Positions 31,601 through 33,742 of a stretch of 64,000 nt of DNA are shown here, piece by piece. Made by a program: the position numbers and the translations under genes. The notes under the pieces were generated by a model. That model was given only the letters and a program-made list of their open reading frames with translations. It did not search any database and had not been told where the DNA came from. Each line of letters starts with the position of its first letter. The stretch's first letter is position 1. The stretch comes from Bugula neritina (taxonomy: Eukaryota; Animalia; Bryozoa). The DNA lies in contig OZ037772.1 in assembly GCA_964035545.1 (NCBI GenBank), positions 8,106,889 to 8,170,888 of the forward strand, written 5' to 3'.

Positions 31601-33742
31601 GAGAAAGAAACGTTTCACGTGAAAAACAAGAAACGGTCTAGCAGGCACTACGCTATCAGCATGACCTGGTTTAGGAAGTGGGAGCAGTTTATTGATGTAT
31701 GTTGAAGTATTGTCATATTATGATGAAAGATTTTTCAAAAGTTTTACCATTTCTTTTCACATGATGTCTGTTGTGATATTTTCATACTTTGTTCAAAATT
31801 TGTATCATATTTTTTATAAAGCGTGTTGCCAAGCTGTTTGTTCCGTCTTGTATGATACATGCATATACTAAGATGAAAGATTTGTTCAAAGATTTTCGCA
31901 ATCCCTTTTATATGATGTCTGTTGAAGTATTTTCATAATTTGTTCAAAAGTTACATAATTTATTTTGCAAATTACCATTTTGTTCATTCCGTATGTGGTA
32001 CTGTGTGTGATACATGCATATATCGGTTTTGTGTCTGCTCGAACATAGAGTTACTGTCACTAGGGTACACACGTGTGTTAACATTGCAGGGTAACACCAC
32101 AACCCCTCCCGGCCCCATTGACAACAAGTCCATAGTCATGGAGAAACCTGGTCTCAGGAAGGAGAAACATACTCTGAGGAAGCGAGCAGACTACGGCACC
32201 CTCAAGGGTCCCCTCTGGAGGTTCCTACACGGCATCTATGGCGGTGGACCTGAGGTTATATATGTGAGTTGTTTCTGTAGAGTGTGATCTTTTAGAAGTA
32301 ATATTAAAGCGGGGCAGTCGTGGTCTAGGGGTTAGAGCGTTTGCCTAGTACACACGAAGTCATGGGTTCGAACCCCGACAAAGGCCATTGGTGATGTTAG
32401 GAAGAGCATCCAGTTATAATTGCTCTTGTGCCTCATTTAAATAAGTCTTTAGCTCAATTTAACATAAACTAGTTTCCATCAGGGATTTCTCACAGGGATA
32501 GTGACTATAAACTTGCGCGAGTTTTACTAAAGCGGGACTCACCCCAACATTTACATCAACATTTACATACACTGCGTTTCCAAGCTTCGGATTTATTTTT
32601 TATTGTTTGGAAACAGTTGCATCAAATGAAAACACAGCCATAAGTTTGTGCAAACTTTAACCGAAAATTCAATAGAATGGGACTATGGGCATCCATTCAT
32701 GTGATGCGAAGTTATGGAAACGGAGTGATAGTATTATGTCTTAGCCTTTAACTTAACATGGTTTCAGATTTCTTTGCCGTTTGACTTTATAATTAATTTT
32801 CTGCACATTTGTTTTCAGTTAGTTTACTGGTTCACACGAGAGAATAAATCCTGATGATTACTTATTTTATTATTATTCTTGAAATTCACCGGTTTATCTC
32901 TTCACTTTACTATAAGTATTGAGGGAACACAGGTAGCAATGTGACTATGCTGTCGGTACTTATTGTGTGACTTTTAATTGGGCAATTTTTTTGTGCAGTC
33001 GTATCTTGAGAATGCGGAAGTGAGTGATGATGAAATTCACGGGGAAATGGTTCAAGCTAGTAGCAGCGATTCAGTCACCACGTCTCCTATCCAATCAGAA
33101 GACTCTTTGACCAGTGACCACACCTCCTCCACCAGTTTCCGCCAATCAGAAGAGAGGACATCTGTGAAGGTTTTCTCTAGCCAATCTGAACAAATAGTTA
33201 GTCAATCTGGCGCGCGTTCTCTCCAGCCATCTAAAAGCAAGTCTGTAACTGTAATGGTTCACACGAACCAATCAAAATCTGACACACAAGCAGATCACCA
33301 ATCAGATTCTAATGTACCAGTGCTGAGCCATTCTGAAGTAGAAATCACTCGGAACGAAACAGAAGTAAAGAACTTTAACCAATCAAAGACTAGCCAATCA
33401 CAGACTGCAACTGTGGTATCGCCATTGATCTCAAAAAGTAAATCCGATGGTAGAATTAGCGACCAATCACCTACTAGCATGTCAGCTAAAGGCAGCAAAT
33501 CTCTAGGCCACGTTTCTGACCAATCAACAATAACCTCTCACACTATTAACCAACCACAGCTCAAAACCAAAGCTTCTAGTCAACAAATGGGTGCAGTGCA
33601 GACAAATTCTGAAACTGATGACCGAAATCATGCCAATAAACCTCTAGCAGGTCTAAGCCAATCAGAGACTCGAATAGATTCATCTAGCCAATCACCATCG
33701 ACAAAACTGAGCAAGTCTGAAAGTAGTATTAACCAACTGTGA
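25699..33742 (+). CDS. USP20: Ubiquitin-specific protease 20/33 (zf-UBP, USP, two DUSP domains) with a Ser/Gln/Thr-rich C-terminal extension. Exons: 25699-25800, 26847-27064, 27512-27658, 27816-27903, 28358-28456, 29044-29426, 29718-29785, 29892-30086, 30344-30418, 30684-30846, 31201-31422, 31513-31696, 32090-32263, 32999-33742
   Basis: Cys box [47 protein letters not shown], His box [14 protein letters not shown], and DUSP motifs PGPITN, YGGGP, PPGPIDN. Confidence 0.93.
25826..26362. mobile_element. Foldback element with a SINE nested between its arms
   Basis: 25826-25950 is an imperfect reverse complement of 26225-26362. Confidence 0.65.
25958..26169 (-). mobile_element. tRNA-derived SINE
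   Basis: Full-length reverse-complement match to the family, including GGTTCGAACC (B box). Confidence 0.9.
28492..28765. repeat. Near-perfect 11-bp tandem repeat CATACAGTATA
   Basis: Directly visible; it produces the spurious ORFs at 28342-28854. Confidence 0.97.
32311..32526 (+). mobile_element. tRNA-derived SINE (best-preserved copy) with target-site duplication TAAAGCGGG
   Basis: A box GTGGTCTAGGGG, B box GGTTCGAACCC, central GTTAGGAAGAGCATCCAG, and a flanking direct repeat. Confidence 0.92.
32570..32725. mobile_element. MITE-like inverted repeat
   Basis: Arms CACTGCGTTTCCAAGCTTCG and CGAAGTTATGGAAACGGAGTG. Confidence 0.45.

What the first reader, a model, noticed from the sequence alone, without database searches (positions are those of the whole stretch)
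32999..33742. USP20 terminal coding exon is an array of in-phase CCAAT boxes (possible dual-coding exon)
Seen: CCAATC occurs 11 times on one strand in about 600 bp (33091, 33142, 33181, 33268, 33298, 33379, 33394, 33463, 33520, 33658, 33688), where fewer than one would be expected by chance. All 11 are in the same codon phase, xxC-CAA-TCx, encoding [S/N/D/H/I/R]-Q-S. All 12 Gln-Ser dipeptides in the exon use CAA-TC, never CAG or AGY, and 11 of 12 are preceded by C, although the sequence between them is non-repetitive. Known: RRCCAATCA is the NF-Y consensus; vertebrate USP20/33 end soon after the second DUSP domain; SQ motifs are ATM/ATR sites. Inference: this roughly 247-aa tail is either an exonised CCAAT-motif array or a coding exon that also acts as an enhancer or promoter. 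The PPT2-A start lies about 1.1 kb downstream. The codon restriction points to a constraint or origin at the DNA level.
Basis: partly seen in the sequence, partly recalled or inferred. Interest (0 to 1): 0.8.

Follow-up and report, generated by a model that had tools for sequence, protein, structure and literature searches.

The report
CCAAT-box array inside USP20 tail exon
The last coding exon of a bryozoan USP20-type deubiquitinase gene holds eleven copies of the DNA word read by the transcription factor NF-Y, all in one codon phase, and synonymous codon choice is fixed there in a way protein-level selection cannot explain, so the exon probably carries a second, nucleotide-level signal whose function is untested.

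Summary
There are 11 CCAATC on the + strand between 33091 and 33693, against about 0.1 expected from a 200-kb genome sample. All lie in the phase xxC-CAA-TCx. All 12 Gln-Ser pairs use CAA-TC(A x10, T x2).

With the protein and the exon's codon pool held fixed, synonymous shuffles give 2.7 CCAATC and 1.0 CCAATCA (P<5e-5). The bias is not genome-wide: CAA-TCA is 5 of 49 Gln-Ser pairs in long ORFs elsewhere.

Transcript-like contigs from four studies join 32262 to 32999, so the exon is spliced to USP20. The 247-residue tail is disordered and single-copy, with no relatives except a sibling lineage (dN/dS 0.33). Distant USP20-like genes stop 10-55 residues after the second DUSP domain.

Conservation among the copies is confined to about T-A-R-C-CAA-TCA. 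It starts at a third codon position, and the flanks are unrelated. This points to nucleotide-level selection on an NF-Y-type CCAAT box; the single phase points to an origin by in-frame duplication.

The same motif forms arrays inside long ORFs of other genes in other codon phases. Genome-wide, pairs prefer a spacing of exactly 30 bp.

NF-Y binding and any enhancer role are untested. The SQ/ATM reading is not supported.

The parts
26838..31705 (+). Upstream USP20/33-type coding exons (zf-UBP, UCH, first DUSP), scanned exon by exon only
   Evidence: PF02148 on 26838-27125. PF00443 on 27513-27659, 29032-29454 and 30521-30847. A weak DUSP match on 31103-31447.
32090..32262 (+). Penultimate coding exon, end of the second DUSP domain (ends ...GGGPEVIY, phase 0)
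   Evidence: PF06337 DUSP E=1.2e-10 on 32030-32262. Transcript-like contigs cover 32090-32263 and continue into upstream exons.
32263..32998 (+). Last intron (GTGAGT...TGCAG). If retained, the protein would end 7 codons later
   Evidence: Joint 32263->32999 (GT..AG) in X1. The same joint, with 6 diverged letters, is in X3, X5 and X9. The read-through ORF ends at 32287.
32314..32525 (.). High-copy interspersed repeat inside the intron
   Evidence: Summed contig depth is 1e3-5e5 and there are many loose ends. It has tRNA-like A/B boxes by eye, but ARAGORN and Rfam give no call.
32999..33742 (+). Terminal coding exon: 247-residue Ser/Thr/Gln-rich disordered tail plus stop
   Evidence: Open frame. 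dN/dS 0.33 against L001, P=6e-4. The 24-nt indel between lineages is in frame. No Pfam match. Only P0001 found among 1.84 billion cluster representatives. Single copy in the genome. AF2 mean pLDDT 43, no secondary structure.
33089..33696 (+). Array of 11 CCAATC boxes (10 are CCAATCA, 7 are RRCCAATCA), all in phase xxC-CAA-TCx. Start-to-start spacings are 51, 39, 87, 30, 81, 15, 69, 57, 138 and 30
   Evidence: None of the 44 substitutions against L001 falls in the 70 aligned motif positions (P=0.009).
33200..33208 (+). Degenerate twelfth copy (AGT-CAA-TCT)
   Evidence: family D12.
33364..33387 (+). 24-nt in-frame segment holding the copy at 33379. It is absent from the sibling lineage, so copy number changes
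   Evidence: L001; X9, 24 letters left out at 33363.
33413..33529 (+). 117-nt block with no difference between the two lineages. It holds the boxes at 33463 and 33520
   Evidence: Alignment A1.
33807..33812 (+). AATAAA, the likely USP20 poly(A) signal, conserved in L001
   Evidence: Read. The 3' end itself was not mapped.
34270..34278 (-). Single RRCCAATCA box in the conserved upstream region of the thioesterase gene
   Evidence: A contig of X1 covers 34192-34400.
34823..35026 (+).
   Evidence: Sequence read. PF02089 on 36036-36290 and 37190-37330.

Best explanation
The stretch is the true last coding exon of a USP20/33-type deubiquitinase in a bryozoan, most likely of the Bugula neritina species complex. 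It adds a lineage-specific, disordered 247-residue tail.

Inside it lies an old array of NF-Y-type CCAAT boxes with consensus T-A-R-C-CAA-TCA-(G)-A. The array most likely arose by in-frame duplication of a short motif-bearing unit. That would put every copy on one strand and in one codon phase. The spacers then diverged beyond recognition and shifted by in-frame indels.

The boxes themselves have been kept by selection acting on the nucleotides, not on the peptide. The conserved block begins at the third base of a codon whose first two bases vary freely, and it includes two further synonymous positions.

The most likely reader of the motif is NF-Y on DNA, which would make this a coding exon with a second, chromatin or transcriptional role. 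That role could be an enhancer or an NF-Y platform in the roughly 0.5-1.1 kb upstream of the next gene's promoter.

Shown: the motif array, its phase, the synonymous restriction, the splicing, purifying selection on the tail, its lineage specificity, and the presence of NF-YA in the genome.
For: 1. Nucleotide-level signature. Synonymous shuffles that keep the protein give 0.96 CCAATCA against 10 observed. TCA follows Gln in 10 of 12 cases against 4 of 48 elsewhere (P=7.5e-7). Ser before Gln-Ser is AGY in 5 of 5 cases against 16 of 55 (P=0.004). C-ending codons before QS are 9 of 10, against 32 of 58 among such codons in the whole exon. Positions 1-2 of the preceding codon differ from the commonest codon in 11 of 24 cells, against 3 of 36 for the three synonymous core positions (P=0.001).
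2. Sharp motif boundaries. Only -4..+7 rises above phase-matched background, and there is no tandem repeat.
3. Not a genome habit. CAA-TCA is 5 of 49 QS pairs in long ORFs elsewhere, and the preceding base is C in 33%. CCAATCA is 31 observed against about 26 expected in 200 kb.
4. Motif conservation. 0 of 44 substitutions against the sibling lineage fall in the motifs (P=0.009), while the residue before Gln changes three times with the C kept (I>V, R>H, N>D).
5. NF-Y context. NF-YA is encoded at C1:18491565 (100.6 bits). The same 9-mer sits in classic promoter positions in the window: three boxes at 8327-8394 next to a TATA at about 8440, and a box plus TATA at 44482 before the paralogue's ATG.
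6. Same DNA word, different peptides. CCAATCA arrays lie in long ORFs of other genes in other phases: A-N-H in L035, A-N-Q/H in L038, Q-S in L032. In the 22-unit L035 array the core deviates in 4 of 189 cells against 44 of 441 in the spacer (P=3e-4).
7. Spacing. CCAATCAG pairs occur at 134 places at exactly 30 bp, against 27 at 29 bp and 58 at 31 bp; reversed controls give 0-5. This lies within the double-CCAAT NF-Y modules described in PMC4889920.
8. Origin by duplication. There is one phase and one strand, although the phase xCC-AAT-CAx would be equally compatible with a hydrophilic tail. A neighbouring pair of 15-nt units is 13/15 identical at 33376-33405. One copy is gained or lost between lineages.
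Against: - There is no binding, accessibility or reporter data.
- The spacings inside the exon are irregular (15-138 bp; 30 bp only twice). The array lies at least about 500 bp from the nearest mapped transcript start, unlike the canonical -60 to -100 position of CCAAT boxes.
- The only orthologue available is close (dS 0.135). At the synonymous core sites alone, 0 changes against about 2 expected is not significant.
- The Gln-Ser dipeptide is itself enriched (12 against 5.6, P=0.002), so some peptide-level selection or shared descent also contributes.
- Some CCAATC pairs at 30 bp are plain by-products of conserved peptides, for example 44215/44245 coding P-I in the thioesterase paralogue.
- All copies lie on the sense strand, which an RNA-level element would explain equally well.
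- The other arrays were found by requiring intact motifs (ascertainment bias), and their ORFs have no confirmed transcripts or homologues.
Confidence: 0.5

Rival explanations
1. Relic of a coding minisatellite only. The tail grew by in-frame tandem duplication of a Ser-Gln-Ser-Glu-like unit. The Gln-Ser core is kept for a protein-level reason (a short linear motif or phosphosite), and the uniform codons are inherited from the founder unit with no DNA-level function.
For: One phase and one strand. QS is enriched as a dipeptide. Decayed variants such as S-H-S-E, S-K-S-E and N-Q-P look like mutated units. L032 shows a young 24-bp coding repeat with the same core. A copy is gained or lost between lineages. 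The genome is rich in minisatellites of every kind: a control 7-mer gives as many triple hits.
Against: The flanks are at background similarity. Units long enough to be duplicated in frame must therefore be saturated with change, yet 33 of 36 synonymous core positions are intact. The conserved block starts at a third codon position while positions 1-2 of that codon vary (P=0.001). The tail overall has an ordinary synonymous divergence (dS 0.135, close to that of the introns).
Confidence: 0.18
2. RNA-level element. CCAAUCA in the mRNA is a repeated site for an RNA-binding protein, a small RNA or a splicing or 3'-end factor that acts on the USP20 transcript.
For: All copies are on the transcribed strand. 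The constraint includes synonymous sites. The exon is a long, lineage-specific terminal exon that must be defined by the splicing machinery.
Against: No known RNA family or motif was found (Rfam blank). The motif matches the NF-Y DNA consensus, including the RR flank. The same word is conserved in both orientations at promoter positions and in a 29-bp array with no open frame (L037), and pairs genome-wide prefer a 30-bp spacing. The sense orientation is also what coding constraints would impose, since the reverse motif codes L-I-G, D-W or a stop.
Confidence: 0.14
3. SQ/TQ cluster domain. The tail is an ATM/ATR substrate region, and the motif reflects selection for Ser-Gln phosphosites.
For: USP20 is a known checkpoint-kinase target in vertebrates (from memory, not checked here). 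The tail has 8 [ST]Q in 247 residues.
Against: 8 observed against 7.7 expected from composition (P=0.54). Only 5 of the 12 motif copies have Ser before Gln. The conserved unit is x-Gln-Ser with fixed codons, which a phosphosite does not explain.
Confidence: 0.03
4. Not protein-coding. The exon is 3' UTR or a mis-joined piece, and the open frame is accidental.
For: No proteomic evidence, no protein relatives outside the sibling lineage, and a low-complexity composition.
Against: A 254-codon open frame in DNA of 35% G+C. A phase-0 junction with the DUSP exon seen in contigs of four studies. dN/dS 0.33, P=6e-4. The only indel is a multiple of three.
Confidence: 0.03

Closest known systems
Multi-CCAAT NF-Y promoter modules (double or arrayed CCAAT boxes; PMC4889920, PMC1802594)
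   Same: The extended motif is the same (RRCCAATCA/G). Several copies lie on one stretch of DNA. Two neighbouring pairs in the exon, and many pairs genome-wide, sit 30 bp apart, within the 26-30 bp class reported for NF-Y-bound double boxes.
   Different: Those modules are non-coding, lie within about 100 bp of a transcription start and hold 2-4 boxes. Here 11 boxes lie inside a translated exon with irregular spacing, at least about 500 bp from the nearest mapped transcript start.
Human ABO upstream 43-bp minisatellite bound by CBF/NF-Y (Kominato 1997, reviewed in PMC7187371)
   Same: A tandem array whose units each carry a CCAAT box, reported to act as an NF-Y-dependent enhancer kilobases from the promoter. 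Copy number varies between alleles.
   Different: It is non-coding and has clearly homologous units. Here the spacers are unrelated and the array is translated.
Exonic enhancers / dual-use codons ('eExons', 'duons'; PMC4745165)
   Same: A coding exon with a proposed second, transcription-factor-binding role that restricts synonymous codon choice.
   Different: Known cases are single sites or footprint-defined regions, and the genome-wide codon effect is disputed. Here one motif is repeated 11 times in one phase, with a strong, directly measurable synonymous bias but no binding data.
Coding minisatellites and repeat-derived disordered tails
   Same: Origin by in-frame tandem duplication, a low-complexity Ser/Thr/Gln-rich product, and copy-number change between lineages.
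   Different: There is no detectable repeat unit today (TRF blank). Only a 9-11 nt core survives, and its boundaries do not follow codon boundaries.
USP20 / USP33 (VDU2 / VDU1) deubiquitinases
   Same: The zf-UBP, USP catalytic and two C-terminal DUSP domains are all found exon by exon.
   Different: Other members, including the distant relatives fetched here, end 10-55 residues after the second DUSP. This gene splices on a 247-residue orphan tail.

Membership tests
NF-Y (CBF) binding site / CCAAT box | CCAAT pentamer with the flanks of the NF-Y matrix (RR before; C/G then A/G after) | tested here: met
   CCAATC in 11 of 11 copies, CCAATCA in 10, RRCCAATCA in 7. Position -1 is a purine in 10 of 11 copies. 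The consensus itself is taken from established knowledge of NF-Y, not from a matrix scan.
NF-Y (CBF) binding site / CCAAT box | The organism encodes the sequence-specific subunit NF-YA | tested here: met
   PF02045 match at G000:C1:18491565-18491729, 100.6 bits, above the cut-off.
NF-Y (CBF) binding site / CCAAT box | Occupancy by the NF-Y trimer in vivo or in vitro | not testable with these tools
   No ChIP, DAP-seq or footprint data are available.
NF-Y (CBF) binding site / CCAAT box | Promoter-proximal position (about -60 to -100 from a transcription start) | tested here: not met
   The array spans 33091-33693, and the nearest transcript-like contig of the next gene starts at or before 34192. 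Enhancer-type NF-Y sites are known, so this lowers the promoter reading only.
Exonic enhancer / dual-use codons | The sequence is translated | tested here: met
   Spliced in phase to the DUSP exon. dN/dS 0.33 and an in-frame indel. No peptide evidence.
Exonic enhancer / dual-use codons | Synonymous codon choice restricted at the motif beyond codon usage | tested here: met
   Synonymous shuffles give 0.96 against 10 CCAATCA, 0 of 20,000 shuffles reach it. The genome proxy gives 10% CAA-TCA.
Exonic enhancer / dual-use codons | Enhancer or promoter activity of the exon DNA | not testable with these tools
   Needs a reporter assay, ATAC-seq or CAGE.
SQ/TQ cluster domain (ATM/ATR substrate region) | Ser/Thr-Gln sites clustered beyond what composition gives | tested here: not met
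   8 observed against 7.7 expected, P=0.54.
Tandem repeat / minisatellite | Head-to-tail units with recognisable similarity | tested here: not met
   TRF finds nothing at minimum score 30, and the flanks are at background. Only one 15-nt neighbouring pair (13/15 identical) and a few 12-mers recur.
USP20/USP33 subfamily | zf-UBP + USP catalytic domain + two DUSP domains | tested here: met
   PF02148, PF00443 (three exons) and PF06337 (one strong and one weak match), tested exon by exon.

The most novel reading that the evidence does not exclude
In this bryozoan genome, arrays of NF-Y-type CCAAT boxes phased at about 30 bp would form a class of DNA elements that also sit inside coding exons of several unrelated genes (USP20 tail, L032, L035, L038). 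In each gene they are read in whichever frame stays open, so the repeat peptides (Q-S, A-N-H, A-N-Q) would be passengers of a DNA-level signal. The USP20 tail would be an old member in which only the boxes are still held by selection: a true dual-use exon on a scale not described before.
Probability: 0.3. Interest if true: 0.8.

Novelty: new variant of a known kind. Interest (0 to 1): 0.62.

Why it matters
Whether transcription-factor sites inside coding exons really shape codon choice is disputed. The effect is usually weak and statistical. Here a single exon shows it at full strength. One consensus motif occurs 11 times in one phase, with three synonymous positions per copy nearly fixed while the neighbouring amino acid varies.

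This gives a compact test case. The boxes can be recoded without changing the protein, to ask what is lost. If NF-Y binds, it would show that a lineage-specific protein tail can be shaped by a DNA signal. If other genes of the genome behave the same way, part of the low-complexity proteome of this animal would be a by-product of regulatory or chromatin arrays. It also bears on how new terminal exons arise in compact genomes where one gene's 3' end lies a few hundred bases from the next promoter.

Tried and rejected
1. Protein relatives of the tail. The word search found only P0001, the sibling lineage. The full HMMER search of 1.84 billion representatives found the same single hit. A six-frame search of the own genome found only the exon itself. 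Pfam was blank.
2. Metagenome scans. The scan with the tail alignment found no relatives. The scan with the DUSP2 exon gave 10 distant loci with short ends and no CCAATC arrays.
3. Repeat structure. TRF and repeat searches on the exon found no unit.
4. A second reading frame or a long antisense ORF was rejected.
5. Genome-wide excess of CCAATCA was rejected (31 against about 26 in 200 kb). An excess of triple-CCAATCA clusters over a control 7-mer was also rejected by raw count (608 against 901). Only the period differs: 29-31 bp in 20 of 38 arrays against 3 of 23, counted by hand (P=0.0025).
6. Link to the thioesterase gene by paralogue comparison. The inverted duplication starts only at 36079. 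The paralogue has an ordinary CCAAT-TATA promoter, and its two CCAATC at 44215/44245 are coding (P-I phase).
7. Rfam on 32200-34500 and ARAGORN on the window were both blank.
8. Homologues of the L032 and L035 ORFs: none found. The protein-atlas look-alikes of the L035 repeats were uninformative.
No annotation-based, genome-wide count of coding arrays could therefore be made.
10. The USP20 exons were never joined into a full-length model, so no full-length protein search, region search or fold was run.
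Full report
**Observation.** The frame 32999-33739 is open for 247 codons, followed by a stop at 33740-33742. All 11 motifs sit in phase xxC-CAA-TCx.
- All 12 Gln-Ser dipeptides are CAA-TC(A x10, T x2), and 11 are preceded by C. 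The twelfth copy is AGT-CAA-TCT at 33203.
- A random 200-kb sample of the same genome has 57 CCAATC per 400,000 strand positions. That gives 0.106 expected here (Poisson P=4e-19).
- Shuffling synonymous codons among identical residues keeps both the protein and the exon's codon pool. It gives 2.68 CCAATC, 0.96 CCAATCA and 0.56 RRCCAATCA, against 11, 10 and 7 observed. None of 20,000 shuffles reaches the observed values.
- TCA codes Ser in 10 of 12 cases after Gln but in only 4 of 48 elsewhere in the exon (P=7.5e-7).

**Is the bias a habit of the genome?** No.
- In 133 long ORFs (26,135 codons) from the sample and the rest of the window, used as a rough stand-in for coding sequence, 49 Gln-Ser pairs include only 5 CAA-TCA. 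The preceding base is C in 33%.
- CCAATCA as a word is not enriched genome-wide: 31 observed against about 26 expected.

**Is it an exon of USP20?** Yes.
- Upstream exons, tested one by one, carry zf-UBP, three parts of the USP catalytic domain and DUSP.
- Logan contigs of four runs from four studies were laid on 31900-34400. They skip 32263-32998 with GT..AG ends and continue into the upstream exons, with pieces up to 2.8 kb. These runs are only guessed to be RNA. However, contigs that skip an intron precisely and span several exons are spliced transcripts.
- The junction is phase 0 on both sides.
No full-length protein search was made.

**The organism.**
- The only protein relative of the tail is P0001, on a 4.7-kb JGI metagenome contig (L001). 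The record name of that contig carries AY690838, the accession of the Bugula neritina mitochondrial genome (PMC2678162).
- The genome is 216 Mb. An earlier agent of this scan reached the same organism independently.
- L001 and the transcript contigs differ from the window by about 6% in the exon and 14-17% in introns. They therefore belong to a sibling lineage of what is known to be a species complex. The organism name is an inference.

**The tail as a protein.**
- It is 24% Ser, 9% Thr and 9% Gln, with no Pfam match and an AlphaFold mean pLDDT of 43 with no secondary structure (the alignment had only two rows).
- A full HMMER search of 1.84 billion cluster representatives finds only P0001. 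The own genome holds one copy.
- Ten distant USP20-like loci from metagenomes end 10-55 residues after the HGIYGGGP motif, and none has a CCAATC array.
- If the last intron were retained, this protein too would end 7 codons after the DUSP domain.
- Against L001 there are 20 synonymous and 24 non-synonymous differences: dS 0.135, dN 0.044, dN/dS 0.33 (P=6e-4 against neutrality). The single indel is 24 nt.
- The tail is therefore a lineage-specific, translated, moderately constrained disordered extension.

**What is conserved among the copies?** I aligned the 12 copies on the CAA codon and compared each column with 5000 phase-matched random sets from the same exon.
- Only positions -4 to +7 stand out: T, A, R, C, C-A-A, T-C-A, then a weak G and A. 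Everything beyond is at background, and TRF finds no repeat.
- The conserved block does not respect codon boundaries. The codon before Gln varies in its first two bases (AGC, AAC, GAC, CAC, CGC, ATC; 11 of 24 cells differ from AGC), but its third base is C in 11 of 12 copies.
- The three synonymous positions of the core differ in only 3 of 36 cells (P=0.001).
- When the preceding residue is Ser it is always AGY (5 of 5, against 16 of 55 elsewhere; P=0.004), which supplies the purines of RRCCAAT.
- Between the two lineages the residue before Gln changed three times (I>V, R>H, N>D), each time keeping the C. None of the 44 substitutions touches the 70 aligned motif positions (P=0.009).
- A peptide-level requirement for Gln-Ser cannot produce this pattern.
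- Simple inheritance from a duplicated unit cannot either. A unit long enough to duplicate in frame would include flanks that are now saturated with change, and the synonymous core sites would have decayed with them.

**Why one phase?**
- RRCCAATCAG read as xxR-RCC-AAT-CAG gives x-[T/A]-N-Q, which would suit a hydrophilic tail as well as [N/S/D]-Q-S does.
- Eleven independent gains would therefore be expected to mix phases. They do not, so descent from one unit by in-frame duplication is the simplest origin.
- Traces of such turnover remain. Two neighbouring 15-nt units at 33376-33405 are 13/15 identical. Two exact 12-mers recur. The copy at 33379 lies in the 24-nt segment missing from the sibling lineage.
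- The Gln-Ser dipeptide is also enriched over composition (12 against 5.6, P=0.002), which fits shared descent. [ST]Q is not enriched (8 against 7.7), so the ATM/ATR idea adds nothing.

**Who reads the motif?** The word is the NF-Y consensus.
- The genome encodes NF-YA.
- In this window the same 9-mer sits in textbook promoter positions. Three boxes lie 29-30 bp apart at 8327-8394, next to a TATA at about 8440. One box plus a TATA lies before the ATG of the inverted thioesterase paralogue. One box lies in the conserved upstream region of the downstream thioesterase gene. A conserved pair lies 30 bp apart in a USP20 intron.
- Perfect RRCCAATCA occurs 12 times outside the exon in the window, against about 2 expected from base composition (the expectation is my own estimate).
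- Binding was not and could not be tested here.
- The array is not in a canonical promoter position. The conserved AATAAA of USP20 is at 33807, and a contig of the next gene already covers 34192, so the intergenic gap is under 400 bp. The array lies roughly 0.5-1.1 kb upstream of that gene's transcript.
- That makes an upstream-enhancer role conceivable in so compact a locus, but the paralogue offers no support for it.
- An RNA-level reader remains possible because every copy is on the sense strand. Coding constraints would force that orientation anyway.

**Genome-wide context.**
- Triple CCAATCA clusters number 608, mostly minisatellites. A control 7-mer gives 901, so their number is unremarkable.
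- Their period is not unremarkable: 29-31 bp in 20 of 38 distinct arrays on the two largest contigs, against 3 of 23 control arrays (hand count; P=0.0025).
- Pairs of CCAATCAG occur at 134 places at exactly 30 bp, against 27 at 29 bp and 58 at 31 bp, with 0-5 for the reversed patterns. Many are lone pairs with unrelated spacers. This agrees with the double-CCAAT NF-Y modules of 26-30 bp described in human cells (PMC4889920).
- Of six arrays I could fetch, four or five lie in long open frames, and not in one phase:
  - L032: 24-bp x6, Q-S phase, 212 codons.
  - L035: 30-bp x22, A-N-H phase, 351 codons. The ORF begins with the end of an SH3-like domain, and its repeats pass Pfam PF25296.
  - L038: A-N-Q/H phase, 157 codons.
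  - L036: Q-S phase, 100 codons, doubtful.
  - L037: 29 bp, not open.
- In the 22-unit L035 array the 9-nt core deviates from the consensus in 4 of 189 cells, against 44 of 441 in the spacer (P=3e-4).
- Three caveats apply. These arrays were found by requiring intact motifs. Variants within an array are not independent. None of the ORFs has a confirmed transcript or homologue.
- Counter-examples also exist in which CCAATC is a plain by-product of a conserved peptide.
- With those limits, the common denominator across loci is the DNA word, not a peptide.

**Verdict.**
- The specific functions proposed (NF-Y binding, enhancer for the thioesterase gene) are plausible but untested. The SQ-site remark is not supported.
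- I put about 0.8 on nucleotide-level selection on the motif. I put about 0.5 on the full reading: NF-Y-type boxes on DNA, arisen by in-frame duplication, in a dual-use exon. I put about 0.2 on a role specific to the neighbouring gene.
- The closest known things are NF-Y multi-CCAAT modules, the NF-Y-bound ABO minisatellite enhancer (PMC7187371) and exonic enhancers (PMC4745165).
- An 11-copy in-phase array in a translated exon, with this degree of synonymous fixation, is a new variant of those kinds.

Noticed in passing
G000 genome-wide: Pairs of CCAATCAG are strongly preferred at exactly 30 bp start-to-start: 134 places, against 27 at 29 bp and 58 at 31 bp, with reversed-pattern controls of 0-5. 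Many are lone pairs with unrelated spacers, probably double-CCAAT promoter modules.
   Followed up: partly
L035 = G000:C1:233377-236406 (array at C1:234540-235176): 22 units of a 30-bp CCAATCA-core repeat lie inside a 351-codon ORF, read as A-N-H-L-T-A-C-S-I-S. The ORF starts with the end of an SH3-like domain (weak match), and its repeats pass Pfam PF25296 'Decapeptide repeat region'. I could not find out what that family is.
   Followed up: partly
Six in-phase xxC-CAA-TC(A/T) lie in a 24-bp tandem repeat (G-Q-S-D-x-S-N-A) within a 212-codon Ser/Thr-rich ORF. Other third positions vary between units, but the core does not. No protein homologues were found.
   Followed up: partly
L038 = G000:C2:6979858-6982887: A 30-bp x4.5 CCAATCA-core array lies in a 157-codon ORF, read as A-N-Q/H-H-T-P.... 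This is a different codon phase from the USP20 tail.
   Followed up: partly
window 27698-27786 (+): Three 40-bp tandem units, each with CCAATCAGCTG, lie in the USP20 intron just after the catalytic Cys exon.
   Followed up: no
window 29807-29845 (-): A pair of RRCCAATCA boxes 30 bp apart lies at the start of a USP20 intron. Both are unchanged in the sibling lineage, while the sequence just downstream diverges.
   Followed up: partly
window 8327-8394 (-) and about 8440 (+): Three CCAAT boxes 29-30 bp apart sit immediately upstream of a TATATATGG, a textbook multi-CCAAT/TATA promoter for a + strand gene starting near 8470. Two more boxes lie at 7344 and 7378.
   Followed up: no
window 32314-32525: A high-copy interspersed repeat lies in the last USP20 intron. 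Its depth in the laid contigs is very high, and it has tRNA-like A and B boxes by eye, but neither ARAGORN nor Rfam calls it.
   Followed up: partly
window 33413-33529: This 117-nt stretch of the tail exon has no difference at all between the two lineages, synonymous sites included, although the exon averages 6% divergence. It holds two of the boxes.
   Followed up: no
G000:C8, at least 12 loci between 289484 and 4554393: A dispersed repeat family carries two CCAATCAG 31 bp apart around a near-palindromic spacer. It is probably a transposable element that spreads CCAAT pairs.
   Followed up: no
window 44215 and 44245 (-): Two CCAATC 30 bp apart lie in the first coding exon of the inverted thioesterase paralogue, read as P-I (I-P-P-I-S and R-P-I-I-Y-M-H-G). 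They are a by-product of a conserved peptide and a warning against over-reading 30-bp pairs.
   Followed up: yes
window 28474-28825: A long tandem repeat, open in several frames (a recurring Y-T-Y-S-I-H-T-V type translation), lies in a USP20 intron. There is also a (TA)n tract at 35056-35146 in the first intron of the thioesterase gene.
   Followed up: no
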